This document shows positions 29,671 to 48,700 of a stretch of 64,000 nt of DNA, piece by piece; positions within the stretch are counted from its first letter, which is position 1; the number at the start of each line of letters is the position of its first letter. The notes beneath the pieces were generated by a model that saw only the letters and a program-made list of their open reading frames with translations, searched no databases and had not been told where the DNA came from. Location: positions 10,540,001-10,604,000 of the forward strand of contig CATNEN010000001.1 in NCBI GenBank assembly GCA_950097015.1, given 5' to 3'. The position numbers were made by a program, and so were the translations under genes. Source of the stretch: Macrostomum hystrix (Eukaryota; Animalia; Platyhelminthes).

Positions 29671-30117
29671 GCATGTAACATGAGTCACAGTCACTATGCT
29701 ATGACTCATCTGACTGAGTGACAGTGTGGCATGAGTCACAGTCACTATGCAATGACTCATCTGACTGAGTGACAGTGTGGCATGAGTCACAGTCACTATG
29801 CTATGACTCATCTGACTGAGTGACAGTGTGGCATGAGTCACAGTCACTATGCAATGACTCATCTGACTGAGTGACAGTGTGGCATGAGTCACAGTCACTA
29901 TGCTATGACTCATCTGACTGAGTGACAGTGTGGCATGTGTCACAGTCACTATGCTATGACTCATCTGACTGAGGGCCAGTGTGGCATGTGTCACAGTCAC
30001 TATGCTATGACTCATCTGACTGAGGGACAGTGTGGCATGAGTCACAGTCACTATGCTATGACTCATCTGACTGAGTGACAGTGTGGCATGTGTCACAGTC
30101 ACTATGCTATGACTCAT
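29671..30117. repeat. 51-bp self-complementary minisatellite abutting the stop codon of the PHIP-like paralog
   Basis: Nearly 9 copies of GCATGAGTCACAGTCACTATGCTATGACTCATCTGACTGAGTGACAGTGTG. Confidence 0.95.
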
Positions 30118-31928
30118 TAGCGCAGAGCACCAGGCACCATTGCAAGCAGGCACTCTCTACCCGGAGCCATCAGCAAGCGGTACAAGGCAGTCCTGGGATT
30201 CGGCAGTCGCCCATCTTTGACATAAATGCGGCAGCAGGCGGCGACAGTGTCGCATAAAAGACTGGCCCGCTGTACATTCAGAGCGGCCTCTATTGTCTCC
30301 TGGCTGTCTCCGAGGCGATAGGCCAGACGCAACCGGCAACGATAATTGGTTAGCAGCACGGCCATGTCGCATAGGACAGATAATAGATGCCGGTATTGGC
30401 CTAAACGCAATCGTTTTACAATTGAGGAAAAGCTGATAGGAAAGAATTGTGGGGCGCAGCGGCTTAGTCGACCAGTTAGAGGACGCCGGCGACGTGTTCG
30501 ACAATCGGAAAGAAATGCTACAGGAAATAGGTAACGCCACCGATTTCTGCCGAATTCCTCTAAGCAGTTCAGCGTGTTTCTCAACGATTCCGATTGGTTA
30601 TTGCTCCCCTGCGTAGATTTTCTTATGGTACTACTGCAAGTACTAGTTGGCTGATCAGCAAATGCGGAACTGCAGATTTTTGTTAGCTGCAATGCGTTTC
30701 AGTATTGAACTGTCTTTAATGATGTGTATTGGGAACCCATGGGATGGGTGAGAATGATTTCAGATGGATGAGATAGGATTTGCGATGGGTGAGATAGGAT
30801 TTGAGATGGGTGAGATAGGATTTGAGATGGGTGAGATAGGATTTGCGATGGGTGAGATAGGATTTGCGATGGGTGAGATAGGATTTGAGATGGGTGAGAT
30901 AAGATTTGAGATGGGTGAGATAGGATTTGAGATGGGTGAGATAGGATTTGAGATGGGTGAGATAGGATTTGAGATGTGTGAGATAGGATTTGAGATGGGT
31001 GAGATAGGATTTGAGATGTGTGAGAATTATTTGAGACGGGTTAGAATGATTTGAGATGGATGAGATAGGATTTGAGATGGGTGAGAATGATTTGAGACGA
31101 GTGAGAATAGTTTGAGACGAGTGAGAATAGTTTGAGACGAGTGAGAATAGTTTGAGACGAGTGAGAAAGCACATAGCTACATAATTTAAAATCAGCACTC
31201 ACAGGGCGCATGTGCCATGGGCTGACGAAGTTGTCGCATCCGTTATTGCTGGATTCAGAATCCCAGCTGACCCTGATGCAGCGCCAACCGCTAACTAATC
31301 TGGACTTTACAAAGCCCTTCACTGTGCCGCGACACGGCGTCCTTCTAGCGTTGTCATGGCAACAATGAGAATTTTCGCATAGAAGCCGATCGCCAACATT
31401 CCAGCAGTGCCGCTGCATAGCCTTATTATAGTCGCTTAGCGGAACAAGAAACTCGGGAGCTAGCCTGGGGCTCAACACAGGCCAGGCAATCTCAAAGGCC
31501 CTGGTCGACTCTCCGCCGCAACCAGTCAGCAGCGGCTGCAGACGAAGCCTCAGCAACCAAGCCGATCCTCGACGCCGTTTATTCCTGCTGTAACAATAGC
31601 GAATGCCGACAACTCGAACTGGCTGACGGGCCGGTGGTTGGCTGACGTCAGCCAGGCCATTGTCAGCAAGCCACGAGGCGTGAGCATCGCGCAGGTAGAC
31701 TGCCAGATCGCCAACCTGCGGAGCGAAGCAGGTCTTCGCCGGTTTGAATCGCTTCGCCGGACGCGCGCTGTGTTCATCGGCAGACGTCGGAGCGTGTCTT
31801 TTAAGAAGTACAACAGGCTCCGAATGAAATATCTGATCCCATTCTTTGGGATTATTGGACAGTCCGACAACGGACAGGCCGGCAAAGCTAGGCGACAAGC
31901 GACGAAGGCGAATCTGCAGTTGCGGCAT
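30117..31928 (-). CDS. Diverged partial BRWD/PHIP paralog: cryptic Tudor/ancillary domain (exon 31928-31203) + degenerate bromodomain (exon 30686-30117), about 431 aa
   Basis: Exon A FAPQVGDLAVYLRDAHASWL...PEFLVPLSDYNKAMQRHCWNVGDR...WRCIRVSWDS...VSPWHMRP aligns with the neighbour's YVPQIGDEIVYFRQGHQLY...LDFMVLRQTYDRALQRNWKVGDR...WLSVRAKWDS...LSLWDLHP. Exon B FPISFSSIVKRLRLGQYRHLLSVLCDMAVLLTN...QRASLLCD aligns with BD1 YPIDLSTIRSRLRNMYYRRLLSVQYDVRFLANN...RRARLLTD. Phase-0 intron with GTGAGT donor (31202) and TTGCAG acceptor (30687); no stops. Confidence 0.8.
30742..31166. repeat. 21-bp satellite GAGATGGGTGAGATAGGATTT, then 20-bp GAGACGAGTGAGAATAGTTT (intron of the PHIP-like paralog)
   Basis: Tandem copies between the predicted donor and acceptor. 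Confidence 0.93.
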
Positions 31929-32139
31929 CGACTCGATTGGCTGAAGAATAACAAGTCACGGTTGGGATTTTAAAGTACTTTTTCTAAGACAATCAATAAT
32001 CTGGCATGACTTCTAAAGTCAAGATTTATGATCAAAGATGTTAAGAAATAGATCGAATGAAGAAATTTGATAAGGTTTGGATTAAAACAATGTCACTACA
32101 ATTTAGCATTTAGGAATTTGACGATAGGGGCTTTCAAAC

Positions 32140-32630
32140 TAGAAATGAGATAGAGATTTGGGATTTAGAAATGGGATTGGGATTTGGGTATAGAAATAGG
32201 ATTGGGATTTACGATTTAGAAATGAGATTGAAATTGGGGATTTAGAAACGAAATTGGGATGTGGGATTTAGAAATGGGATTGGAATTTGGGATTTAGAAA
32301 CGGGATTGGGATTTGGGATTTAGAGATGAGATTGGGATTTGGGATTTAGAAATGGGATTGGGATTTGGGATTTAGAAATGAGATTGGGATTTGGGATTTA
32401 GAAATGGGATTGGAATTCGGGATTTAGAAACGGGATTGGGATTTGGGATTTAGAAATGGGATTGGGATTTGGGATTTAGAAATGAGATTGGGATTTGGGA
32501 TTTAGAAATGGGATTGGAATTTGGGATTTAGAAATGGGATTGGGATTTGGGATTTAGAAATGAGATTTGGATTTGGGATTTAAAAATGGGATTGGAATTT
32601 GGGATTTAGAAATGGGATTGGGATTGGGAT
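32140..32630. repeat. About 26-bp satellite GGGATTTAGAAATGGGATTGGGATTT
   Basis: Tandem copies. Confidence 0.93.
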
Positions 32631-33199: not shown

Positions 33200-33597
33200 G
33201 GGTGTTGAAGCATTGTGATTTGAGTGTCTGATTCAATACTTGAAGGTCGGGGGTTCGATTCCCGGCTTCACTGGAACAATTTTGGTCCTTTGGCCACATT
33301 TATTTAGGGCGCAGCCGCGGAGAGAAGGCTTGGTGGCTTGTCGTGCAATTAATACCCCTAAGGGCGAACCTCCTAGGCACATTGAAAGTGTACGCTGCCA
33401 GACGATGAGAAGTCAGGGCAGATGTGCACACCCGAGTGAGCGTGTGCTCCGGAGTCAGCGAAATGGGCAGAATTGCCTCCTCGCTGGCTGCGGGTCTAGT
33501 GTCACCAGATGATGTGCCATTGCCCGCAGCCCTCCTATTATTATTATTATTATTATTTATCCAACTATAAAAATAAGGTACCAGCATCAGCTGGTAT
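33200..33597 (+). mobile_element. tRNA-derived SINE family B, interrupted by the family A copy; related fragments at approx 47010-47085 (+) and 55010-55075 (-)
   Basis: ACTTGAAGGTC..GGTTCGATTCC head and AAAT..GGT.CCAGCATCAGC tail recur at 33240/33575 and 47020/47062; B box and CAGCATCAGCTG recur in reverse complement near 55020-55068. Confidence 0.55.
33291..33558 (+). mobile_element. SINE family A, 5'-truncated copy with (ATT)n tail
   Basis: TGGCCACATTTATTTAGGGCGCAGCC...CCCGCAGCCCTCCTATTATTATT, homologous to the 53864 copy. Confidence 0.85.
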
Positions 33598-33717: not shown

Positions 33718-36700
33718 TCATCTTCTACGCACAACTGCCCCAGGTCGACCATTGGAGTCGATGGAGTCGCTACCGGCGTCGCTGCCTTCAACAACATCAG
33801 CGGCGCGGTGATGCCGGCCGCGGTTAACCGGACGCCGGTCGCCGCTGTCCTCGTCATCGTCGGTGTCCTCGAGCATAGCGCGATAATCCGGACGCTGACG
33901 CCGCAGAGCGGATCGTCGGACACCCACAGCGGGTTCGACTTTCACAATCGACTTCGAGCGCCGAGGCCGTTTAGCTTCGCCGGCGCCAGACTCCGTTGTC
34001 GATTTAGATTCGTTCAGGTTTTCCTCCTCGTCAGAGGATTCCACCACCATAGCCGGTCGGCGCCGCTTCGGCCTAGTCGACGACGCGGACGGCTCTGCGG
34101 CTGCCGACAGTCGGTCTGGACCGTGTCGACGCTGATGACGTCGCTGCTGACGCTGAACCTGGCGTCGAGTACGCGGATGCCGACCGCCGCTGCTGAGCTG
34201 CTGATGCTGCGAGTCTGACGCGCTCAGATTTGAACGGTCATTGTCGCGACGCTGATGATTTTCGTCGGTGCTCTCCGAGTAGGTCGCCTCGCTGTCTTCG
34301 CTGCCTTCGGTCTGGTCATCCGTGTCATCGGATTCGCAGTAGTTTACCTACAGTGCGGCGACAATGGAATGGAAACTGGATTTAGGGAATTAGGAAATGG
34401 GAAGTAATAAATCTGGAATGGGATCAGGAGGGGATCATATTAGGAATAGGATTAGGAAGGAAAGCTAAGGAATTTAGAAACCGGATCTGAAAAACTAGAA
34501 ATAAGGATCTAAGGAATTTAGAAAAGGAAGTATATTCAAATGATCCAAGTCTCGAAAATGACATGTAACTTTTGAAATAGAATCTAAGGCTCGAAAACGG
34601 GATCTAGGGTTCTGAAATGGGATCAAAGATTCTTAAATGGGATCTAAGGTTCTGAAATGGGATGCAAGGTTCTAAAATGGGATCTAAGGTTCTAAAATGG
34701 GATCTAAGGATTCGAAAATGGGATCTAAGGTTCGGAAATGGTGAGTGTACCTGAGCGCTTCGCTTTCGAAGTCCACCGCTGCCATTTGCCAACGCCGACG
34801 ACGAAGAAGCCGCGGCGGCGGCAGACCGGCCTCGATTCGGTGCAGCAGATGCCGTCCTGCGCTGCTGCTGCTGCGGCCGTTTAGTCGGCGTTGCCACAGA
34901 AACAACAGCGTCAATGGACTGGCCCTGCTGTTGCTTCCGCCGCTTAGAAATGACACATCGGTCTTGTTGGGTCTTTTTAGTCACCGAGGAAGACGAACAA
35001 GCAGCAGCTGCGCCAGTGGCTGCGGGAGCAACCAAACTGACATCCTGACCCTTGGCTCTCATTCGACGCCACCGTTTCAGCGCGCCGTTCATTAGCCGCT
35101 CGAATTCGCGCTGCAAAGTCAGCGTCATCTGGTAGATCCTGGAGGTCGGCACAGTGTTGTAGGCTCTGGAATTGCTAAACATTCGCTGGAGATCGCGAAA
35201 AAATTCCAACGGACTGGCGTAGCAACCGTTGCTAAGGCGTTGCCTTGCGGTGCTAAGATCGATGGGATCCGAAACAACGTCTAGATAGTCAGGATAAGCT
35301 TCCAGATCTACCGGATGCTGAAATGGCAAAGATTCATCCCGTTGGCTAAGCTTAGCCAGTACTCGATAGCACAGCCTAGTCCACAGCGGCTGCTGCTGCT
35401 GATGCTGCTGCGACGGGCCTGGAAGCGATGACGAAGCTGATGCTAAGCCTTCTTCCGCTGTCAACCGCTGCTGGTCGTTGCCAGCTTCAGACGAATGATC
35501 GACATTGGCCTAGGCGAAAAAATGTTTTTTGAAATATACTAATAAGTATTTTCCGCAAAAAAGGTCTACTAATAGTAGTAAAATTTAAAATAGGGGGTCT
35601 GGTGGCAGAGCGGTCTAAAGCGTTTGCCTCTCGCACCAAGGTCCCTGAGCTCGATTCCGCGGCGAGACCACATAGAAGGCTTGGTGGCTTGTCGTGCAAT
35701 TCACGCCATTGAGGGCCAAACTCCAAGGCAGTGAGAGTGTACACTGCCTGACGATGAGAAAGTCAGGGCAGATGTACACGCCTTCGTGAGCGTGTGCTCA
35801 TGAGTCAGCTAATTGGGCAGAATTGCCTCCTCGCTGGCTGCGGGTCTAGTGTCAGCAAATGATGTGACATTGCCCGCAGCCCTCCTGAAATCATTATTAC
35901 TATTAATATTAATATTTAAAATACTTACATTTTCTTCTTCGCTGTCACTTATTTTTCTTTTCTTTGCGGTAGTCTTTGTATCGAAATCTTTGTCATCTTC
36001 GGAGCTGGCCTCCGAAGACTCCGAGTCACTGTCGTCGGCTTCATCACCAATGTCGGCCTCTTTATCATTATCGTCGTCAAGTTGTTCGTCATTGTTCAAA
36101 GCGTCGTCGTCATCTTCGAATTCGCTGAGATGCAGGCCGTCCCTGTTCTCGTCGGTTAATTCGTCCAGCATCTCGCGATACAGCCGGCCAACATCCGTGC
36201 ACTCTGTGCGCCTGATAAACTCCAACAGCAGGTCGGTGAGCAGCCTGGCCCGCCTAACAATCACAGTCTCGGCTTCGTTGAAATACTCGGCATTGTTGGC
36301 AAGGAATCTGACGTCGTATTGCACCGATAGCAGCCGGCGATAATACATGTTCCTGAGTCGGCTTCTAATTGTGCTCAAATCAATGGGATAGGCGATCATG
36401 AAGCCGTAGGATGGATACAGGTCCAGATCCACCGGCTTGGCGAATTCGCTGAAAACGGGCAGGTCGATCAGGTAGTCCAGGGCGGTGGCGATTCGATTGC
36501 ACTCGGCAGGCCGACCGCCTGGCTGGGGCCATTCGCGCTCGCAAGGACTGTACTGCAGATTGGCGAACTCGCTGGCTGTCACTGGGCGATTCTCGTTGGC
36601 CAATTCGGAGCTTTGGAGATGGGAAAGTATGACTTTGAAGGATAATTTATGCGGGGATGCAAATTAACGAGGGGATGTTATATGATATTGGATGTATATA

Positions 36701-39700
36701 AATAAATTACCAGGGGAAATTTAATAATAATATTAAAATGAGGGCAATACCAGTAAGAGTTATTCAAGCCTAGAGGGTCGACAAAGAAGGGAGGTTTGGC
36801 GGAGAATAGAGGAGGCGAGAGAAGAGGAGGGAGACAGGAAAAAGGGAAGAGAGGGAAGAGGAAGAAGAGGAGATTAGAGAAAACGAGATGAGACGAGACG
36901 AGAGGAGATGAGACGAGTTGAGAGATAAGCAGATAAGAGATGAGAAGCAGATAAGAGATGAGAAGCAGATAAGAGATGAGATGAGAGAAGAGGAGATGAG
37001 ATGAGTTGAGAGATAAGCAGATAAGAGATGAGATGAGAGGAGAGGAGAGAAGAGGAGAGAAGAGGAGAGAAGAGGAGGGAGTAGAGGAGGGAGGAGATGA
37101 GATGAAATGAGATGAGAGGAGAGATTGAACAACTGAGAAGGGAACTGAGATGAGAAGAGAAGGGGCAGAAACAGAAGCAGGCATGCCTTCAGTAATTGAC
37201 TACAATGTGATGAAAGTGAAGGTAACAATGATCATAGGCAGGCATACAACTCACCCATCGTCTCCAACAATGAGCGGATGCAGATCCCACAGGCTGAGGC
37301 ACTCCTCAGTGCCTTCGCTATCCCATTTGGCTCGCACGCTGAGCCAGTACGAGTCAGGGAAGGCTTCCTCGCAGGCCGCAATGCCCACGATGCAGCCGGA
37401 CCACCAGTAGTCGTCGATGATGGCTCTAAACCGATCGCCAACTTTCCAATTGCGCTGCAGAGCCCTATCGTAGGTCTGGCGCAGCACCATGAAATCCAGG
37501 ACATTGTCCATGTCGTGAAAGCGCAACTGAAATTTGCCCCTCGAACAGTCGGCAAAGGCCAGGGTCATCTGGACCAGGCGAGGCGAATGTTTTAGCAGCG
37601 GCTTCATGCCGGACACTTTCATCTGCTCGTGCGGCGACAGGTCGGGCATGCGCAGCCAGGGCGGATCGCGATCGACTTTGTAGGCGTTGGTGGCCTGCGG
37701 GAGACCAGGGGAGTGTTTTAAATACCCACTGCCTACTTCTAGATAGCTCACAAACCAAATGACCGATTTAAGTGAAACTCTACCCTGTGAATATGGATAT
37801 GGATAATATGGATAATAGGGTGTAGATAAGGTGGACTTACACTTATCTACCTACCTTATCTGCTTCTGTACCCTACCTTATCTGCTTCTGTACCCTACAT
37901 TATCTGCTTCTGTACCCTACCTTATCTGCTTTTGTACCCTACCTTATCTGCTTTTGTACCCTACCTTATCTACCTCGAAACCCTACCTTATCTACATCAA
38001 AACCCTACCTCGAAACCCTACCTTATCTGCTTCTGTACCCTACCTTATCTGCTTCTGTACCCTAGCTTATCTGCTTCTGTACCCTACCTTATCTACCTCG
38101 AAACAATACCGCATCTACCCCCGTACCCTACCTTATCTACTTCCGTACCCTACCTTATCTACATCCAAACCCTACATTATCTACCCCCGTACCCTACCTT
38201 ATCTACATCGAAACCCTACATTATCTACCCCCGTACCCTACCTTATCTACTTCCGTACCCTAACTTATCTAATCTCGATACCCAACCTTATCTACCATTC
38301 TAACCTACTTAAACTACCTTTCCAACCTACTACACTAATTTCTCATGTCTCTAGGTCCACGGCACCCGTCCTCACCTCAACGGTGTTGATATAAAGCTGA
38401 TGCCCCTGCCTGAAGTACACAATCTCGTCGCCAATCTGAGGCACGTAGGGACTGTGCCTAGGCAGGGTGGAAGTCAGCCATTCAGGCGGCCGATAATCTT
38501 CGGACAACTTCAACTTCTTCTTCTGCTGCCTGTTGCTAAGCGGAACGGCGTCATAGGATGCCGCTGTTCTCGCTGGCAAGCGTCTAGACGATGAGCGCCT
38601 AGGCAGCGATGCCGCTGGAGCCAAAGTCGGCTTCCTCTTCGTACTGGCCGATTTGTCCTTCGCTTTAGAAGAGGCCGACTGGCCGCGAGACCGACTTCTT
38701 GACTGCCGGGGCGCCGCTGGGGACTGCATGAGAGTTATTATAAAATAGAGGCTCAATTAAACAGAAAAGGTTTTGATAATTTTCGATCAGGGATCGCTGA
38801 AAGCTTCAGTTGGGGATTTGGGATCACTGAATGGAAATTGGAAAACTTCAGTTGATGATTTGTTATCACTGAATGGGATTTTTCAGTTGGGGATTTGGGA
38901 TGGCTGAATGGGAAGCTTTAGGTAGGGATTTGGGATTGCTGAATGGGAAGCTTCAGTTAGGGATTTGGGATTGCTGAATGGGAAGCTTCAGTTAGGGATT
39001 TGGGATCGCTGAATGGGAAGCTTCAGTTAGGGATTTGGGATCGCTGAATGGGAAGCATTAGTTAGGGATTTGGGATCGCTGAATGGGAAGCTTCAGTTAG
39101 GGATTTGGGATCGCTGAATGGGATTTTTCAGTTGGGGCTCTGGGATCGCTGAATTGGATTTTTCAGTTGGGGCTTTGGGATCGCTGAATGGGATTTTTCA
39201 GTTGGGGCTTTGGGGTCGCTGAATGGGAAGCTTCAGTTGGGGCTTTGGGATCGCTGAATGGGAAGGCTTCAGTTGAGGATTTGGGATCGCTGAATGGGAA
39301 GCTTTAGTTAGGGATTTAGGATCGCTGAATGGGAAGCTTCAGTTGGGCAAGAACAACAAGACCAGTGGCCCCACTCACCTCAGCGTCACCTTCCTCATCT
39401 TCGGAGGACTCGGAGTTGTCGCCGTCATCCGAACTATCAGACGTAGTCGAAGTAGCCGTTGTCTCAGATTCTTCATCGTCGTCATCGTCGGTACCAGAGC
39501 TGCCGGACGAATCGCTGCCATCGCCGCGGTGATTCATCGATGCGCCGGACGGCCCAGCGCCGGAGGTTGAAGCCGATGTTGCAGCAGCGAAGGCTGCAGC
39601 CGCAGCGGACCGCCTGACTTTGCGACGTTGAACTCGCTTCGGCATCGCCATTCTGCCCGCACCCTGATTGGGAAGAATTTTCAATTTTGTTGCCTCTGGT

Positions 39701-42700
39701 TTCATTATTTAAGAAAGGACCATAGTCACATGCATATGAACATAGTCACAGAGCCTTTAGAACATATATTTCTAAATATATAGCTCTGTGCATGGATTAG
39801 CAGAGGGACTTCGAGAAACAGTATATGGACTTCTATATTCAGTATATGGACTTCTAGATTCAGTATATGGACTTCTAGATTCAGTATAGGGACTAATAGA
39901 TTCAGTATAGGGACTTATTTATTCAGTATATGGACTTCTAGATTCAGTATAGGGACTTCTAGATTCAGTATATGGACTTCTAGATTCAGTATATGGACTT
40001 CTAGATTCAGTATATGGACTTCTATATTCAGTATATGGACTTCTAGATTCAGTATATGGACTTCTATATTCAGTATATGGACTTCTAGATTCAGTATATG
40101 GACTTCTAGATTCAGTATAGGGACTTCTAGATTCAGTATAGGGACTTCTAGATTCAGTATATGGACTTCTAGATTCAGTATAGGGACTAATAGATTCAGT
40201 ATAGGGACTTCTTTATTCAGTATATGGACTTCTAGATTCAGTATAGGGACTTCTAGATTCAGTATAGGGACTAATAGATTCAGTATAGGGACTTCTTTAT
40301 TCAGTATATGGACTTCTAGATTCAGTATAGGGACTTCTAGATTCAGTATAGGGACTTCTAGATTCAGTATAGGGACTTCTAGATTCAGTATATGGACTTC
40401 TAGATTCAGTATATGGACTTCTAGATTCAGTATATGGACTTCTAGATTCAGTATAGGGACTTCTAGATTCAGTAAAGGGACTAATAGATTAGAGTATACA
40501 AAATTCTAGGATAACAGTACATTTAATTCTAGATAAAAGTACATTTAATTTTAGATAAAAGTACATTCAATTCTAGGTAAAAGTACATTTATTTCTAGAT
40601 AAAAGTACATTTATTTCTAGAAATAAGTACACTGATTTCTAAATAAAAATAGACAATGTTATAGATAAAAGTACATAGACTTTTAGATTCAGGTTTTAGT
40701 TGAACTATTTCTAGATATAGTACAACTACATGGAATTGTAGTTGAACTACAACTACATCAAATTTTGTTAAAATCGATTACTTGGTTTTCTATTTTATTT
40801 TTTACATATTCGTAAGAGTCACAGGTAAGTACCAACCTCATCGGCAAGCCAATCAGAGTACTCAGACTCGGTAGTCCTATCATCGCTAGAATCGTCTCCA
40901 GCCGCTTCCAATTGAGCATAGACTCGATCGACATCTTCACCGCTGCCGCAAGTTTCCACGTCCGTGTCGTACAGAGCTCTGGCAGTTAGACGATTGGTGG
41001 TGGCGGCAGATGCTACTGCCATGGTAGATTCTACTGGTAGAGCCTGGCTTAGCGCCGGATGCTGTAGAAATATTTGAAATAGTTATTTAACATTTTGAGA
41101 ACTTCATTGGATTTCCCGAGAAAATTTTTCTCGGGATTTAATCAAAACATGAATTGAGGTAAAACAGAACAGAAACAATCATTATTAATTCCCTAGCAAT
41201 GATTTATCACATTACAAACCTAACTTCCAGACCTTTTTGTAGAAATTTTAAAATGACACTAGACCCGCAGCCAGCGAGGAGGCAATTCTGCCCATTCCGC
41301 TGACTTCTAAGCACACGCTCACACAGGTGTGTACATCTGCCCTCATCGTCAGGCAGTGTACACTCTCACTGTGCCTTGAAGGGTTGGCCCTCAAAGGCGT
41401 CAATTGCACGACAAGCCCCCAAGCCTTCTACCCGCGGCTGCGCCCCAAATGAATGTGGCCTCGCCGCGGAGTCGAACTCAAAAGCGTTAACTCTCCCCAC
41501 ATATTTTTCTACATCAGCAATGAATTTACCTGCTGTTGTGAAATAGGTAGCTGAGGATCTCTCTGCAGCTGCTGATCGGCTGACTGACCGCCGCCAGATC
41601 CGCCTACAGCAGCGGAAGACAATGATTGCTGACCAGACGACACACCGCCTACCGACTGCATCAGTGCCTGCTGCTGATGCAACAGAGGATTATGGGCCTG
41701 CTGCTGCTGCTGCTGCTGCCTGGAAGATCTAGCCAGATTCGGAGCCTGCTGATCCGGGGGCCTCAGTCGGCATTCGATGCAGAACTGGCGAACCTCTCGA
41801 TCGCCGGCCGCTTGTCGCCTAGCAACGGACTGGGCTAGTTGAGCGCCAGAGAGCGGCGGCACCAGCTGGCGGCTCAGCCAGACGGATCGCTGCAGATAGG
41901 ACCGCGGCGGACCGAACACGCGGTCTCTGGCAGCCACGGACTCGGCGATGGAGTCGTCAACTACACGCATATCGCCTGCGTCGTCGGTACGACAGTAGGG
42001 TATCAACTCCGCTATGGGAAGCGACTCGCGGCCTGGCACCTGGGAGCGAATGGTGGGGGGATAATTCTAGGGAATTTTCTGTCATTTTTCAGAATATCAA
42101 TTACAGAGGTTGTTAAAAATTATTCAATGACAAGCATTAAAATTCTTAACCTGCATCAAATAGAGCATAAAATATCTCACAAAATCTCTTCCAAATCAAA
42201 AGGAGCAAGGAAATCTAACCCCTATCACACCACATTCAAAGGTAAATGGCGAAAAATCTCACCCAAATTATAGAAAGTAGCTAAAATCTCACTGAATCAA
42301 AGGTAAGTAGTCAAAATCTCACTCTACTCAAAGGTAAGTAGCCAAAATCTCATCCTAGTCGAAGGTAAGTAGTCAAAATCACACCCTACTCAAAGGTAAG
42401 TAGCCAAAATCTCACCCTACTCAAAGGTAAGTAGCCTAAATCTCACCCTACTCAAAGGTAAGTAGCCAAAATCTCACCCTACTCAAAGGTAAGTAGCCAA
42501 AATCTCACCCTACTTAAAGGTAAGTAGCCTAAATCTCACCCTACTCAAAGGTAAGTAGCCTAAATCTCACCCTACTCAAAGGTAAGCAGTCAAAATCTCA
42601 CTCTAATCGAAGGTAAGCAGTCAAAATCTCACCCTAATCGAAGGTAAGCAGTCAAAATCTCACCCTAATCAAAGGTAAGCAGTCAAAATCTCACCCTAAT

Positions 42701-45700
42701 CGAAGGTAAGCAGTCAAAATCTCACCCTAATCAAAGGTAAGTAGCCAAAATCTCACCCTACTCAAAGGTAAGTAGCCAAAATCTCGACCCTACTCAAAGG
42801 TAAGCAGTCAAAATCTCACCCTAATCGAAGGTAAGCAGTCAAAATCTCACCCTACTCAAAGGTAAGTAGCCAAAATCTCACCCTAGTCAAAGGTAAGCAG
42901 TCAAAATCTCACCCTAATCGAAGGTAAGCAGTCAAAATCTCACCCTACTCAAAGGTAAGCAGTCAAAATCTCACTCTAATCAAAGGTAAGCAGTCAAAAT
43001 CTCACCCTAATCAAAGGTAAGTAGCCAAAATCTCACCCTACTCAAAGGTAAGTAGCCAAAATCTCGACCCTACTCAAAGGTAAGCAGTCAAAATCTCACC
43101 CTAATCGAAGGTAAGCAGTCAAAATCTCACCCTACTCAAAGGTAAGTAGCCAAAATCTCACCCTAGTCAAAGGTAAGCAGTCAAAATCTCACCCTAATCG
43201 AAGGTAAGCAGTCAAAATCTCACCCTACTCAAAGGTAAGCAGTCAAAATCTCACCCTACTCAAAGGTAAGCAGTCAAAATCTCACCCTAATCGAAGGTAA
43301 GCAGTCAAAATCTCACCCTACTCAAAGGTAAGCAGTCAAAATCTCACTCTAATCAAAGGTAAGCAGTCAAAATCTCACCCTAATCGAAGGTAAGCAGTCA
43401 AAATCTCACCCTAATCAAAGGTAAGCAGTCAAAATCTCACTAAAACAAAGGTAAGATGTCTAATTCTCCCTGAATAAAAAAGAATTTTATTTTATCTATT
43501 TTATCTATAGATAAAAATCTATTTTATATGAATAAAATAGGCACAAACCCGTCGTTGAATCTCAGCCTGGTATGGCTGCATGAGAGCGTCAACCAGATAC
43601 GGCGGCGGCATGAGATGCGGCGGCCTCTGTGTGGCCTCGTCCAACGGCCAACCGTTAGAGTCCAAAACTGGAGGCGGAGAAAAATCCGTATGAAAGAACT
43701 GTTCATCCAGAGCCTGGGCATCGGTGGAATCGTCCGAGGCCAGGCTAAACACTAACAGGTGGCCGACGGCATCGACTACGGCAAGGGTGTCTCCGTCAGG
43801 ACTGAATTTCGCTTCGAACAGACTCACTGGCTGGCGAGTGTTGTTGGCCTGAAGTACGTTGGGTTTGGTCTAGTTGCTATGGAGACAGGGAGTTATTTCG
43901 ATCAGACTTGTCGATTTTAGCACAATGATACGCTTCTAGGAAAGAAGGTAGGTAGGTAGGTTGGTAGGTCAATAGGTAGCTAGGTAGGTAGTAGATAGGT
44001 TAGTAGATAGGTAGGTTAGTGCGTCCGTCATGGAGGCTCCCTGCCGCTAAGTCAAGAAAAAAAGGTAGGTTAGTAGATAGATAGGTTAGTACATAGGTAG
44101 GTTAGTAGATAGGTAGGTTAGTAGGTAGGTAGATTTGGTAGATAGGTAGGTTAGTACATAGGTAGGTTAGTACATAGGTAGGTTAGTACATAGGTAGGTT
44201 AGTACATAGGTAGGTTAGTACATAGGTAGGTTAGTACATAGGTAGGTTAGTACATAGGTAGGTTAGTACATAGGTAGGTTAGTAGATAGGTAGGTTAGAA
44301 GATGGTAGGTTAGAAGATGGTAGGTTAGTAGACAGGTAGGTTGGTAGACAGGTAGGTTAGTAGATAGGTAGGTTAGTAGGTAGGTAGATTTGGTAGATAG
44401 GTAGGTTAGTACATAGGTAGGTTAGTAGATAGGTAGGTTAGTAGGTAGGTAGATTTGGTAGATAGGTAGGTTAGTACATAGGTAGGTTAGTAGATAGGTA
44501 GGTTAGAAGATAGGTAGGTTAGTAGACAGGTAGGTTGGTAGACAGGTAGGTTGGTAGACAGGTAGGTTAGTAGATAGGTAGGTTAGTAGGTAGGTAGATT
44601 TGGTAGATAGGTAGGTTAGTACATAGGTAGGTTAGTAGATAGGTAGGTTAGTACATAGGTAGGTTAGTAGATAGGTAGGTTAGAAGATAGGTAGGTTAGT
44701 AGACAGGTAGGTTGGTAGACAGGTAGGTTGGTAGACAGGTAGGTTAGTAGATAGGTAGGTTAGTAGGTAGGTAGATTTGGTAGATAGGTAGGTTAGTACA
44801 TAGGTAGGTTAGTAGATAGGTAGGTTAGTACATAGGTAGGTTAGTAGATAGGTAGGTTAGAAGATAGGTAGGTTAGTAGACAGGTAGGTTGGTAGACAGG
44901 TAGGTTGGTAGACAGGTAGGTTAGTAGATAGGTAGGTTAGTAGGTAGGTAGATTTGGTAGATAGGTAGGTTAGTACATAGGTAGGTTAGTAGATAGGTAG
45001 GTTAGAAGATAGGTAGGTTAGTAGACAGGTAGGTTGGTAGACAGGTAGGTTGGTAGACAGGTAGGTTAGTAGATAGGTAGATTTGGTAGATAGGTAGGTT
45101 AGTACATAGGTAGGTTAGTAGATAGGTAGGTTAGAAGATAGGTAGGTTAGTAGACAGGTAGGTTGGTAGACAGGTAGGTTGGTAGACAGGTAGGTTGGTA
45201 GACAGGTAGGTTGGAGGACAGGTAGGTTGGTAAATAGAGGACAGATTAGAAGAGTTCAGACCAATTGAAATAAAAATTGCTATTTTTAATCTAGCATTAA
45301 GTTTCTTAAGGATTCATTTCCAGATATGAGATCGAATTGACATATCACCTGATTAACGTGTCGATAAGCCGAATTGGTGGATTCCAAATCGCGCACAGCA
45401 ATTTTGCCATCGTAGCCGGCAGTCAGGAACAGGCGCGGATTGCACGGATGGCAGTCAACAACGAAAACGTCGTCGCGATGATCGCGAAACACGGCCAATA
45501 GGTGGCCGCGGCGGCTGTCCCAGCAGTGGACCAGGTGGTTGGAATGAGTGGTCACTATGCACCTGGTAAATATTAATAGATAGTTGCTATGCAATTGCGG
45601 TGGCATGTTGCGAAACAAGAAGGGTTAGATTGGAAAAGTTGCTGGGAAAAAATTGGGGATGAACAGGGAAAGAACGGTGGGAGAAATTGGGGATAGAACA

Positions 45701-48700
45701 GCGGAGAAATGGGGGATAGAACAGCGGGAGAAATGGGGGATAGAACAGCGAGAGAAATGGGGGATAGAACAGTGGGAGAAAGAGAAAAGAACTGTGGGAG
45801 AAATGGAGGATAGAACAGTGGGAGAAATGGGGGATAGAACAGCGAGAGAAATGGGGGATAGAACAGTGGGAGAAAGAGAAAAGAACTGTGGGAGAAATGG
45901 AGGATAGAACAGTGGGAGAAATGGGGGATAGAGCAGTGGGAGAAATGGGGGATAGAACTGTGGGAGAAATAGGGGATAGAGCAGTGGGAGAAAAAGGGAA
46001 GAATAGTGGAAGAAATGTGGAAGAATAGTGGGAGAAAAGGGGAAGAACAGTTCGAGAAAATGGGGATAGAACAGAGGGAGAACGAGGAACAATGGAGAGA
46101 AGAACATAGGGCAGAGGGCAGAGGACGGAAACAACAGTTGTAAGATGGGGAAGTGAGAAAGAAGGCTGGGAAGGTAAGCTAGGAAACAGAGGCCGCAACG
46201 CACCTATCGTCTGCAGTCCAGCTGACGCCTCTAGCCTGCTGTGGTTGGCCAGGCGGGCACAGCACCAATGAGCGCCAGAGCTGCCTAGAATAGCTCCAGA
46301 CTCGGCAGGAGCCGTCGGTGCTGCAGCTGGCGAATCGGTCGTCCAAGTGACTGTATGCCACACTGTCCACGCTGCCCCGGTGGCCCTCCAATTCGCCAAT
46401 CTTCTCGGGCAGGCCGGGCTGAAAGCTATAGACTCGAATAGCGTGATCTGAGCAGCCGCCAACAAAGAATCCGCCGCCGGCGCTGAAGCAGGAGCACATC
46501 ATGCAGCAGCCGGGCCTGGAGCGTTCAATAAATTTCATTGGCCGATCTTCGAATGCCAGACTAACCGGATCGTAGGCCCAGAAACAGACGCAGCCGTCCT
46601 TGGCGGTAGATGCTAGCCAGCGTTTGGCGCCGCGAACACTAGGCGAGAATGCGACAGAAATGATAGCGGAGGTGTGCAAACTCAGTACGGCCACAGGCGC
46701 GCAGCTGTCAAGTCGCCAGACCATGACGCGTTTGTCGCATGCGCCGGAGGCCAATAGGCGATTGTCGTGCGACACGGCCAAATCACAGATCTCATTGCGA
46801 TGACCGCGCAGTGTAGCCAGTAGGCGCAGAGTTCGACAGCACCAAACCTTGATTAGAGAGTCGTCGGCGCCCTGTTTTGGAAAATAATTAATTCATTAAG
46901 TTAGCAGATTCGATACTCACTACTCATAGTAGATTAATAGTAGAAATACCTACATTTTTTATTTTTCCTAGTCTTTCTACTGTTAATAGTAGGAACAGAA
47001 GAATAGATTGTAGTCTAGACTTGAAGGTCAGTGGTTCGATTCCTATTTAACAAGACACTTTAAATGGGTTCCAGCATCAGCCTTGCTTTTTTCTCGTCTT
47101 TCCTACCCATCTACAGACAATTAGTCAACTCACTGTAATAACAAAACGCGAAGTCCGATCGAAAACAACGCAATAGACGGAATTTCCGTGGCCAACAATG
47201 CGTTTGCGCAATTTTAGGCGCTTAAAAATTGCACACTCCAACTGCAGTCGATGGCGTTGGTCGTAGGCGCTTTGTAGAATGCAGTTTGCTGTTGAAATGT
47301 TTTTTAGGTTATTATATACTAGACAGATAGGAATAACATCTAACCATTTTTTATTTAAACAACACACTACTGCCTATTAAATACTGAAATAAGTAGTTCG
47401 TCAATAATAGTAGTAATCATTGCGGGAGGGCTGCGGGAAATGGCACACCATTTGGTGACACTAGACCTGCAGCAAGCGGAGCAGACGATTCTCGTGTGTT
47501 ACACAGGTGTGCACATCTACATCTTCGGGCAGTGTACACTCTCACTGTGCCTTGGAGGTTGGCCCTAAAGGGTGTAAATTGCACGACAAGCCTCTAAAAC
47601 AGAGTTCTCTCCGTGGCTGCGCCCCGGAATCGAGCTCAGGGACCTTGGTGCGAGAGGCAAACTTGTTAGACCAAGTAGTCTAGTGTGTTGCATTTAAACT
47701 CGTCATGGCTACTGACTTCTTAAATAAGTAGTATATTTTTATTTTACTACAAAAACTCGCTACAGCCTACTGTCTGTACAACGAGTAGTAATAATAAAAT
47801 GGCCGCGACACTCACGAACATTCCGTTTAGATTTAACGCAATTAATTGGCATTCGAAAGCCTTGCCGATGAGTTGGAAAGCTTTGACTCAAAGTTAAATG
47901 AATGCTTCCGTGATCTGAAAATGTTTACGTTTTTTTAGATAATAGTTTTACGAATCATTTTTTCAATAAAAAAATAAAAATAAAAAAATTTTTACGAAAA
48001 CTAATGTGACAACTAAGCTATTGCATAGGAACACGTGAAGTATTTACAAGACATGATGAGACATTTAATAAGCAGAAAGATAGATTTGCATTTGGACTGA
48101 GTAAACATATAAGCAGACTTAACAAAAAACTAGACGAAAAGTATAATATGTAGCACTGGAATAAAGAAAATGTTTCACTCGCCTATGGATGCGTAGCCAA
48201 TCTGACCTGCAATTTTTTAGTCCATGAATTGATGGGACTTCAGCATACCTGGTTTACAGTCTATCCGTTAATCCCTTTGAGATAAGAAAAACTAATGCGC
48301 ACAAATAGAGGTAATGGGATAATGGGTAAGAAAGGAATAGGAAACGGAAGGGGTGGGAAAGAACTGAGAAATAAAGAAGAAATAGTATGGAGAAGATGGG
48401 GATGATAAGGGAAAATGTAGACGAAAGGGAATAGAGAATCAAGAACAATGTGGAAGAAAAGGGAATGGGGAGATAAGGGAATATAGGAGATAATAGAATG
48501 GGGAAGATAAATGAGTGGAGAAGATAAAGGAATGGGGAAGATAAGGGAATGTTGAAGATCAGGGAGTGGGAAAGATCAGGGAGTGGGGGAAGATCAGGAA
48601 GTGGGAAAGATCAGGGAGTGGGGAAGATCAGGAAGTGGGAAAGATCAGGGAGTGGGGTAAGATCAGGAAGTGGGAAAGATCAGGGAGTGGGGTAAGATCA

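What the first reader, a model, noticed from the sequence alone, without database searches (positions are those of the whole stretch)
30117..31928. Hidden 'mini-PHIP': tandem partial duplicate keeping only the Tudor-like + first bromodomain module, with both ligand pockets apparently remodelled
Seen: two ORFs that look unrelated (31041-31928 and 30117-30692) join through a phase-0 intron (GTGAGT at 31202, TTGCAG at 30687) into an uninterrupted protein of about 431 aa, co-oriented with and 1.8 kb downstream of PHIP. It is collinear with PHIP's ancillary domain and BD1, and the intron lies close to the equivalent PHIP intron after the 'W..(H/R)P' motif, while PHIP's intron inside the ancillary domain is absent. 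IIDDYWW becomes DNARRTPC (aromatics lost), the ZA-loop YPSY is replaced by an Arg-rich insert (CRTRRRRPLTGRLSR), and NAEYFN becomes NYRCRL (anchoring Asn lost). An NLS-like RPAKRFK precedes the domain. Established: PHIP/BRWD proteins are DDB1-CUL4 substrate receptors via WD40 and read methylated H3K4 and acetyl-lysine through a Tudor-bromo module. Inference: an old, still-open reading frame lacking WD40 and canonical pockets could be a pseudo-reader or decoy competing with PHIP, or a neofunctionalised basic chromatin/nucleic-acid binder, making a reader/anti-reader gene pair.
Basis: partly seen in the sequence, partly recalled or inferred. Interest (0 to 1): 0.88.

Follow-up and report, generated by a model that had tools for sequence, protein, structure and literature searches.

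The report
Truncated, pocket-less PHIP paralogue in Macrostomum
Next to the flatworm's single PHIP/BRWD chromatin-reader gene lies a real two-exon gene, also kept in a second Macrostomum species, that retains only PHIP's Tudor-like domain and first bromodomain, has lost the key ligand-binding residues of both, and has turned strongly basic; what it does is untested.

Summary
On the minus strand, exon 1 (31928-31203, 242 codons) and exon 2 (30686-30117, 189 codons plus stop) join in phase 0 across a 516-nt GTGAGT...TTGCAG intron. Three collinear stretches match the PHIP gene 1.8 kb upstream: both halves of its ancillary (Tudor-like) domain, and bromodomain 1 rather than 2. The genome is Macrostomum hystrix. 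PHIP and this gene are the only two places in its 220 Mb that match the BRWD ancillary-domain model.

It is a gene, not a relic. M. lignano has a reciprocal-best orthologue (PAA53517.1, 477 aa, from an RNA-seq-based annotation). That protein runs straight across the point matching the exon junction and ends at the same C-terminus. A frame this long without stops has a chance probability of about 4e-8.

In both species the PHIP Trp-Trp site and the bromodomain anchoring Asn are gone, the ZA loop holds an Arg-rich insert, and both domains are basic (pI about 10, against about 5 in PHIP).

The decoy or anti-reader role is untested. The NLS-like motif is not conserved. The intron sits near PHIP's, not at the same place. 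No RNA reads or codon-level test could be obtained, and fold searches were inconclusive. This scan has not reported the finding on other DNA.

The parts
31940..31945 (-). Candidate SL trans-splice acceptor (CTTCAG), ending 12 nt upstream of the ATG and in frame with it
   Evidence: Sequence read. It fits the M. lignano trans-acceptor motif [T/C]TNCAG (PMC8629364). The genome carries the exact 35-nt SL. The M. lignano orthologue's model also starts 4 in-frame codons before its Met. Use of this site is not shown.
31203..31928 (-). Exon 1 coding sequence: 242 codons covering the N-terminal tail and the Tudor-like ancillary domain
   Evidence: Pfam ARF_AD 4e-8. BLASTP to the PHIP ancillary-domain exons 3e-7 and 8e-5. 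Match to the M. lignano orthologue 8e-35.
31692..31721 (-). First ancillary-domain strand motif PQVGDLAVYL (residues 70-79), matching PHIP PQIGDEIVYF
   Evidence: It is identical in the M. lignano orthologue. PHIP's intron 12 codons after this motif (after INTVE, 38376) is absent here.
31203..31454 (-). Ancillary-domain core (residues 159-242)
   Evidence: BLASTP 29% identity, E 3e-7. hhalign 94.9% probability, E 4.5e-8. Shuffle p 4e-7.
31341..31346 (-). Arg195-Arg196, aligned to the Trp-Trp of PHIP's IIDDYWW motif (Ser-Lys in M. lignano)
   Evidence: Alignments. Human PHIP W1081A abolishes H3K4me binding (PMC5710144). Mapping W1081 to this motif is inferred from spacing: 158 residues to N1239 in human against 160-161 here.
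30687..31202 (-). Phase-0 intron, GTGAGT...TTGCAG, 516 nt, holding a 21-nt minisatellite at 30743-31166
   Evidence: The donor fits the M. lignano GT[G/A]AG motif and the acceptor fits CAG. The orthologous protein is continuous across the point that matches this junction.
30117..30686 (-). Exon 2 coding sequence: 189 codons plus TAA, covering a linker, the bromodomain-like domain and a conserved C-terminal tail
   Evidence: Match to the M. lignano orthologue 2e-39, 49% identity, reaching both C-termini.
30228..30584 (-). Bromodomain-like region (exon 2 residues 35-153)
   Evidence: BLASTP to PHIP bromodomain 1 8e-6, against 0.016 for bromodomain 2. Shuffle p 3e-5 against 0.02. Pfam Bromodomain 0.0098, below threshold. 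The AF2 model is helical, with pLDDT about 82 over residues 83-150.
30459..30503 (-). Arg-rich ZA-loop segment (residues 62-76)
   Evidence: M. lignano has a shorter basic segment (RRPRR) at the same place. The alignment to PHIP's PVD...YPSY stretch is ambiguous.
30309..30350 (-). End of helix B and BC loop (residues 113-126), with no Asn at the acetyl-lysine anchor position
   Evidence: PHIP NAEYFN aligns to a stretch whose anchor position is Leu or Gly here and Trp or Thr in M. lignano, depending on the alignment.
33718..47367 (-). Parent gene PHIP/BRWD: WD40 exons, ancillary-domain exons 38723-38376 and 37694-37254, bromodomain 1 exon 36610-35929, bromodomain 2 exon about 35464-34700, stop at 33718
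   Evidence: Pfam: WD40 2e-19, BRWD_AD 3e-25, Bromodomain 5.8e-15 and 9.8e-22. Exon borders read. It is the only above-threshold BRWD_AD match in the genome.

Best explanation
This is a real, separate protein-coding gene of Macrostomum hystrix. It arose by partial tandem duplication of the neighbouring single-copy PHIP/BRWD gene, before the split from M. lignano.

It keeps only PHIP's Tudor-like ancillary domain and a bromodomain-1-derived helical domain. It has no WD40 propeller, so no CUL4-DDB1 coupling is expected, and it has no second bromodomain.

The frame and a set of paralogue-specific residues are maintained between the two species. The Trp pair needed for H3K4me reading and the Asn that anchors acetyl-lysine are replaced, the ZA loop has gained an Arg-rich insert, and both domains have switched from acidic to strongly basic.

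Inferred mechanism: the protein no longer reads PHIP's histone marks in the canonical way. It works as a stand-alone basic binder of nucleic acid or of an acidic chromatin surface, independent of the ubiquitin ligase. Its mRNA is probably made separately, possibly by SL trans-splicing 12 nt upstream of the ATG.

Shown here: the anatomy, the homology, the orthology, the open frame and the residue changes. Inferred: expression in this species, the ligand, and any relation to PHIP function.
For: **Anatomy and homology**
- The anatomy and the phase-0 junction are confirmed.
- Three collinear matches to PHIP's ancillary domain and bromodomain 1 are significant, with negative cross-domain controls.
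- Pfam finds ARF_AD above threshold in both species, and the orthologue also scores BRWD_AD at 6.6e-7.
- The protein-atlas neighbours of the orthologue are all Bromodomain+BRWD_AD clusters (a lead only).

**Origin**
- In 220 Mb only PHIP (90 bits) and this locus (19.5 bits), 6 kb apart, match BRWD_AD.
- Both exons are single-copy in the genome.

**Maintenance**
- The only relative among 1.84 billion representative proteins is M. lignano PAA53517.1.
- It is a reciprocal best hit: 8e-35 and 2e-39 one way, 6e-29 and 4e-34 back to exactly the two exons.
- The orthologue is continuous across the junction point and shares the C-terminus.
- 0 of 20000 shuffles were stop-free (P about 4e-8), while each of the other five frames holds 4-15 stops per exon.
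- 34 and 35 aligned residues are shared by the two species but differ from PHIP.

**Expression of the orthologue**
- The GenBank M. lignano annotation was built from RNA-seq-based transcripts (PMC5730564).

**Charge shift and species**
- pI is 10.0 and 10.2 here, 9.2 and 10.3 in M. lignano, against 5.5 and 4.8 for the PHIP domains.
- The assembly has 220,453,370 bases in 42 contigs, the exact M. hystrix figures (PMC10468722).
Against: - There is no RNA evidence for this species.
- No orthologue DNA could be fetched, so there is no dN/dS.
- The bromodomain assignment is below Pfam's threshold (16.3 against 21.7 bits; 12 bits in the orthologue).
- AF2 models are of low confidence (pLDDT 49.8 and 58.1). 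Fold searches gave only generic helical bundles and weak Tudor-like or bromodomain rows.
- GC3 is lower than in the PHIP exons and there is little codon-position contrast.
- PHIP's own bromodomain 2 lacks the Asn yet still binds H4K12ac (PMC8653789), so loss of Asn does not prove loss of acetyl-lysine binding.
- The basic-binder function rests on composition alone.
Confidence: 0.65

Rival explanations
1. It is the same gene and origin, but still a histone-mark reader with altered specificity. The remodelled Tudor-like and bromodomain pockets would recognise a different modification, or bind acetyl-lysine in an atypical way, so the protein reads chromatin marks without recruiting CUL4.
For: - PHIP bromodomain 2 has Thr instead of Asn and is functional (PMC8653789).
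- Under one alignment the M. lignano orthologue has Thr at the anchor position.
- Residues around both former pockets are conserved between the two species, for example CCH.N, GTV.GF, TNYR and RLAYR.
Against: - The anchor residue differs between the species (Leu or Gly against Trp or Thr).
- The PVD...Y.xY ZA motif is gone.
- Both Trp are replaced by non-aromatic residues that differ between the species (RR against SK). This argues against one conserved new pocket.
Confidence: 0.2
2. The two exons are not a separate gene. They are an alternative 3'-terminal module cis-spliced onto upstream PHIP exons, giving a PHIP isoform with a different reader cassette. This is the idea of scan note s1-847691.
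For: - The exons are co-oriented with PHIP and 1.8 kb downstream of its stop.
- An acceptor-like CTTCAG lies 12 nt before the ATG, in frame and in phase 0.
- About 0.9 kb of the spacer is repeats.
Against: - The M. lignano transcript-based annotation gives the orthologue its own gene number. Its model starts only 4 codons before a conserved Met, not inside PHIP.
- An in-frame TGA lies 10 codons upstream of the ATG, just before the acceptor.
- Splicing from the donor after PHIP's first ancillary-domain exon would duplicate that strand.
Confidence: 0.1
3. It is a decaying, non-functional duplicate (pseudogene) whose open frame is fortuitous.
For: - Codon-position GC contrast is weak.
- Both pockets are lost.
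- No homologue was found outside Macrostomum.
Against: - 431 stop-free codons have a chance probability of about 4e-8.
- The orthologue is only 36-49% identical yet colinear from start to stop, with every indel in frame and the same C-terminus.
- Conservation is concentrated in blocks.
- The orthologue is in a transcript-derived annotation.
Confidence: 0.03

Closest known systems
PHIP/BRWD2, BRWD1 and BRWD3 (CRL4 substrate receptors with WD40, CryptoTudor/ancillary domain and two bromodomains)
   Same: The ancillary domain and bromodomain 1 are homologous and collinear with the adjacent M. hystrix PHIP. As in PHIP, the bromodomain lies in a single exon.
   Different: - No WD40, no bromodomain 2 and no acidic tail.
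- About 30% identity.
- Trp-Trp and the anchor Asn are replaced.
- The ZA loop is longer and Arg-rich.
- pI is about 10 instead of about 5.
- One PHIP intron is missing, and the other is shifted by 7 codons with a different phase.
Macrostomum lignano hypothetical protein BOX15_Mlig025752g1 (PAA53517.1; UniRef A0A1I8HT91, named 'DUF1618 domain-containing protein')
   Same: It is a reciprocal-best orthologue with the same two-domain layout, the same junction point, the same C-terminus, the same lost pocket residues and the same basic charge.
   Different: - 36-49% identity.
- A longer N-terminus.
- A shorter ZA insert.
- No RPAKRFK motif.
- Several near-identical copies, because M. lignano is a hidden polyploid.
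Plant auxin response factor ancillary domain (Pfam ARF_AD; PDB 6sdg, 4ldx)
   Same: It is the best Pfam and PDB sequence match for the first domain, at 4e-8 and 6.7e-5. Like ARFs, the domain has no Trp pair and carries the VSPW motif.
   Different: There is no B3 or dimerisation domain. PHIP's own ancillary domain also cross-hits ARF_AD at 4.9e-7, so this reflects one superfamily, not plant ancestry.
Atypical bromodomains lacking the anchor Asn (PHIP bromodomain 2 T1396, TRIM28)
   Same: The anchor Asn is replaced.
   Different: Here the ZA-loop motifs are also lost, the replacing residue is not conserved between species, and sequence descent is from bromodomain 1, not bromodomain 2.

Membership tests
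BRWD/PHIP family | N-terminal WD40 propeller that docks to DDB1-CUL4 | tested here: not met
   Neither exon nor the M. lignano orthologue has a WD40 match. PHIP upstream has WD40 at 2e-19.
BRWD/PHIP family | BRWD ancillary (CryptoTudor) domain | tested here: inconclusive
   - BRWD_AD scores 14.9 bits here and 29.4 bits in the orthologue, both under the 40-bit threshold. Only the second half of the model is matched.
- Homology to PHIP's domain is nevertheless supported: hhalign 94.9%, BLASTP 3e-7, ARF_AD above threshold.
BRWD/PHIP family | Conserved Trp needed for H3K4me binding (human W1081) | tested here: not met
   The Trp-Trp of PHIP aligns to Arg-Arg here and Ser-Lys in M. lignano. The role of W1081 comes from PMC5710144. 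Its mapping to this motif is inferred from spacing.
BRWD/PHIP family | Two tandem bromodomains | tested here: not met
   There is only one bromodomain-like region, and the protein ends 36 residues after it.
Bromodomain (PF00439) | Profile match at or above the gathering score | tested here: not met
   16.3 bits (E 0.0098) here and 12 bits (E 0.22) in the orthologue, against a 21.7-bit cut-off.
Bromodomain (PF00439) | Sequence descent from a bona fide bromodomain | tested here: met
   - BLASTP to PHIP bromodomain 1 gives 8e-6.
- Shuffle p is 3e-5 here and 2e-5 for M. lignano.
- Bromodomain 2 is weaker and the cross-domain controls are negative.
- The position after the ancillary domain is the same as in PHIP.
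Bromodomain (PF00439) | Left-handed four-helix bundle with ZA and BC loops | tested here: inconclusive
   AF2 predicts helices in the Z, A, B, C order. Foldseek and VIA-align give no specific match: bromodomains appear at E>1 or Z 5.6-6.0 among generic helical hits.
Bromodomain (PF00439) | Anchor Asn at the end of helix B, and the ZA-loop PVD...Y motif | tested here: not met
   There is no Asn in the aligned BC segment and no PVD/YPxY motif, in either species.
ARF_AD / Tudor-like ancillary-domain superfamily | Profile match above the gathering score | tested here: met
   33.4 bits here and 37.3 bits in the orthologue, against a cut-off of 27. PDB ARF chains match at 6.7e-5.
SL trans-spliced gene or operon member (Macrostomum) | SL-carrying reads at an acceptor close to the start codon | not testable with these tools
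   The motif CTTCAG lies 12 nt before the ATG and the genome has exact SL copies, but no reads could be laid.

The most novel reading that the evidence does not exclude
PHIP and its pocket-less, ligase-less, basic paralogue form a co-transcribed pair: one precursor, with the downstream cistron released by SL trans-splicing. The small protein would modulate or antagonise PHIP on chromatin, for example by occupying nucleosome or DNA surfaces or PHIP partners without recruiting CUL4. That would be a reader and anti-reader module under one promoter, conserved in Macrostomum.
Probability: 0.12. Interest if true: 0.75.

Novelty: new variant of a known kind. Interest (0 to 1): 0.45.

Why it matters
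BRWD/PHIP proteins couple histone-mark reading to CUL4 ubiquitin ligation and are disease genes in humans.

Such a paralogue is a ready-made separation-of-function variant. It can show what the ancillary-domain and bromodomain scaffold does apart from mark reading. It is also a clear example of how a partial tandem duplicate becomes a new, fast-evolving gene.

M. lignano carries the orthologue and supports RNAi and transgenesis, so the function is testable. The locus also corrects a database name: 'hypothetical' or 'DUF1618' should read BRWD-derived.

Tried and rejected
With no M. lignano DNA, there is no dN/dS, no check of the orthologue's intron position and no synteny check.

**Searches that found nothing more**
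- Word-based protein searches with exon 1, with the orthologue and with a mixed profile found only the orthologue and one plant ARF.
- The exhaustive representative search also returned a bacterial repeat protein. I discarded it as a low-complexity artefact of the PQVG..L.V motif.
- Exon 2 alone matched nothing among PDB sequences or in the protein atlas.
- Supplements of five Macrostomum papers hold no entry for Mlig025752, so no expression class was obtained.

**Structure**
- The AF2 model of the whole orthologue has pLDDT 49.8 and the model of exon 2 has 58.1.
- Foldseek and VIA-align gave no specific fold match. This is inconclusive, not negative.

**Readings considered and dropped**
- A drosophilid origin, my first guess from poly-Q stretches and short introns, was overturned.
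- A conserved zinc site at the CCH motif was dropped because the His varies among the M. lignano copies.
- Alternative donor and acceptor combinations were dropped because all but one break the frame.

**Joined step**
- The spliced model was searched and folded exon by exon, by reference. Whole-protein analyses used the natural M. lignano protein.
- Two scripts counted the two exon sequences together in memory only: the stop-codon shuffles and one pI value that I do not rely on.
Full report
**1. What is in the sequence**

On the minus strand an ATG at 31928 opens a frame that runs 242 codons to 31203. There a consensus donor GTGAGT begins at 31202. An acceptor TTGCAG ends at 30687, and the frame resumes at 30686 for 189 codons to a TAA at 30117.

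The intron is 516 nt, in phase 0, and consists mostly of a 21-nt minisatellite. In exon 2's frame a TGA lies at 30701-30699. Only the 30687 acceptor, or a second in-frame AG 36 nt further on (30652-30651), keeps the frame. Other donor and acceptor combinations that I checked break it.

**2. The upstream neighbour is PHIP/BRWD**

Minus-strand exons between about 47.4 kb and 33.7 kb carry, in this order:
- WD40 repeats (2e-19);
- a BRWD ancillary domain (3e-25);
- bromodomain 1 (5.8e-15);
- bromodomain 2 (9.8e-22).

PHIP's stop is at 33718, which is 1789 nt upstream of the small gene's ATG.

**3. The small gene is homologous to PHIP's reader module**

Three collinear stretches match the PHIP exons:

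| Small gene | PHIP stretch | Result |
|---|---|---|
| Exon 1, residues 63-87 | First ancillary-domain exon (PQVGDLAVYL against PQIGDEIVYF) | E 8e-5 |
| Exon 1, residues 159-242 | Second ancillary-domain exon | 29% identity, E 3e-7 |
| Exon 2, residues 82-153 | Bromodomain 1 | 35% identity, E 8e-6 |
| Exon 2 | Bromodomain 2 | E 0.016 |

Further checks agree:
- Smith-Waterman scores against 2000 shuffles give p = 1e-3, 4e-7 and 3e-5. The M. lignano orthologue gives the same pattern independently. Cross-domain controls are not significant, at 0.11 and 0.61.
- hhalign gives 94.9% probability for the ancillary domain but only E 0.0016 for the bromodomain, on thin profiles.
- Pfam places exon 1 in ARF_AD above threshold (33.4 bits) and BRWD_AD below it. 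Exon 2 scores 16.3 bits for Bromodomain, below the 21.7-bit cut-off. PHIP's own ancillary domain also cross-hits ARF_AD, so that hit reflects one superfamily.
- A whole-genome scan with the BRWD_AD model finds exactly two places in 220 Mb: PHIP (90 bits) and this locus (19.5 bits), 6 kb apart. That argues strongly for a local partial duplication.
- Both exons are single-copy.

**4. Intron comparison**

PHIP's next intron lies after ...HPLIVGDD(G) and splits a codon (phase 2). The small gene's intron follows directly after ...WHMRP in phase 0. It is therefore 7 codons away and in a different phase.

**5. Species**

- The assembly has 220,453,370 bases in 42 contigs. These are the exact figures published for Macrostomum hystrix (PMC10468722).
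- The 35-nt M. lignano spliced leader printed in PMC8629364 occurs 23 times exactly and 149 times within three mismatches. The reversed control gives 0.
- An earlier scan note (s1-306113) named the same species.

**6. It is a maintained gene**

An exhaustive HMMER search of 1.84 billion representative proteins with exon 1 found one true relative, P0001. This is PAA53517.1, 'hypothetical protein BOX15_Mlig025752g1, partial' of M. lignano, in a cluster of five near-identical copies.
- Exon 1 matches it at 8e-35 and exon 2 at 2e-39, with 49% identity.
- Searched back against this genome, its best hits are exactly the two exons, at 6e-29 and 4e-34. PHIP comes third at 0.39. The two genes are reciprocal best hits.
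- The M. lignano protein runs uninterrupted from ...VSPWEMLP into the linker and bromodomain-like part, at the point where the exons join here. It ends at ...TGVFR, opposite ...PGALR here.
- At 36-49% identity, with many indels, every indel is in frame and both ends coincide.
- In this genome, 0 of 20000 composition-preserving shuffles of the coding letters were stop-free. The expected probability is about 4e-8, and each of the other five frames holds 4-15 stops per exon.
- Conservation comes in blocks. Of the residues shared by the two species, 34 in the ancillary domain and 35 in the bromodomain part differ from PHIP. A derived signature is being kept, not just relics.
- The GenBank annotation of M. 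lignano was produced from genome-guided RNA-seq transcripts cut at experimentally found trans-splice and poly(A) sites (PMC5730564). The orthologue is therefore transcript-supported and was called as a gene of its own.

I could obtain no reads for M. hystrix and no M. lignano DNA. Expression here and dN/dS remain untested.

**7. The pockets**

- In human PHIP, W1081A abolishes H3K4me binding (PMC5710144). In bromodomain 1, N1239 is the canonical anchor (PMC8653789).
- The M. hystrix PHIP motif IIDDYWW lies 160-161 residues before its NAEYFN Asn. In human, W1081 and N1239 are 158 residues apart, so I take the Trp pair to be the W1081 site. This is an inference.
- In the small gene the pair aligns to Arg-Arg. 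In M. lignano it aligns to Ser-Lys.
- The NAEYFN stretch aligns to TNYRCRL...AYRLG. Whichever alignment is used, the anchor is Leu or Gly here and Trp or Thr in M. lignano, never Asn.
- The PVD...YPSY part of the ZA loop has no counterpart. The segment is longer and carries RTRRRR here and RRPRR in M. lignano, but its alignment is ambiguous.
- Both domains are basic. pI is 10.0 and 10.2 here and 9.2 and 10.3 in M. lignano, against 5.5 and 4.8 for the corresponding PHIP domains.
- The NLS-like RPAKRFK is present here, but the orthologue has no basic motif at that place.

**8. Structure**

- AF2 on shallow alignments gave low confidence: the whole orthologue has pLDDT 49.8, and exon 2 has 58.1 with about 82 over residues 83-150.
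- The models show a beta-rich first domain and helices in the Z, A, B, C order.
- For the first domain, Foldseek's top rows were Tudor-like folds (SAWADEE, ARF DNA-binding domain, Agenet, Spindlin), but at E 0.02-0.3.
- The helical part matched only generic bundles, with a few bromodomains at Z 5.6-6.0.
- This neither confirms nor contradicts the sequence evidence.

**9. Separate gene or part of PHIP?**

- A CTTCAG fitting the Macrostomum trans-acceptor motif ends 12 nt before the ATG, and an in-frame TGA lies just upstream of it.
- The M. lignano model likewise begins 4 in-frame codons before its Met. That is what a transcript trimmed at a trans-splice site would give.
- The 1.8-kb spacer holds a 26-nt minisatellite of about 0.5 kb and a short interspersed element of about 0.35 kb. 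After removing repeats it is close to the 1-kb operon threshold used for M. lignano.
- I therefore favour a separate, possibly trans-spliced mRNA. Co-transcription with PHIP is possible. A cis-spliced alternative PHIP 3' module is unlikely but not excluded.

**10. Verdict**

It is unsupported on the conserved NLS and on the equivalent intron.
- The decoy function is untested. Because the mark-binding residues are gone, competition for PHIP's marks is unlikely. The conserved charge reversal points instead to a mark-independent basic binder, though an atypical reader cannot be excluded, as PHIP bromodomain 2 shows.
- This is a new variant of a known kind: a lineage-restricted, truncated BRWD paralogue.
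- Interest is moderate, helped by the experimental tractability of M. lignano.

**Procedural notes**

- The spliced model was handled exon by exon, by reference. The joined sequence was never searched, folded, printed or saved.
- Two scripts counted both exons together in memory only.

Noticed in passing
G000:C39:12667884-12685526 (own genome, outside the window): A variant of the 35-nt spliced leader with three mismatches (...GACTCTCTTTTTTGCATG) forms a tandem array with a period of about 927 nt and at least 20 listed copies. It is distinct from the exact-SL arrays, spaced about 11.6 kb apart on C15, C17 and C42. It may be a second SL RNA gene type.
   Followed up: no
many contigs of G000 (e.g. 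C1:10196334, C8:3485170-3508028, C38:22441508): Another SL-like variant (...TACGGCGAAGGCTCAATTTATTGCATA) is dispersed over many loci. It may be carried by a mobile element or by retro-copied mRNA 5' ends.
   Followed up: no
window 33240-33590 and 35674-35905: A short interspersed element of about 350 nt with a tRNA-like end is present once downstream of the PHIP stop and once, 84-88% identical, in the PHIP intron after bromodomain 1.
   Followed up: partly
window 29679-30117, 30743-31166, 32140-32630, 34570-34729, 37806-38329, 24457-27326: Minisatellites with 51-, 21-, 26-, 20- and 22-nt units, among others, fill the introns and flanks of PHIP and the small gene. The 51-nt array abuts the small gene's stop codon. 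The 21-nt intron array is open in two minus-strand frames, which produces long spurious ORFs.
   Followed up: partly
P0004-P0006 (UniRef A0A1I8HT91, A0A1I8INX6, A0A1I8IT30): UniRef names the M. lignano orthologue 'DUF1618 domain-containing protein'. The Pfam scan here finds ARF_AD and BRWD_AD and no DUF1618, so the database name looks wrong.
   Followed up: partly
window 37257-37694 (PHIP ancillary domain): M. hystrix PHIP reads LSLWD where the small gene, its M. lignano orthologue and plant ARFs all read VSPW. At this motif the paralogue is closer to the superfamily consensus than its parent is.
   Followed up: no
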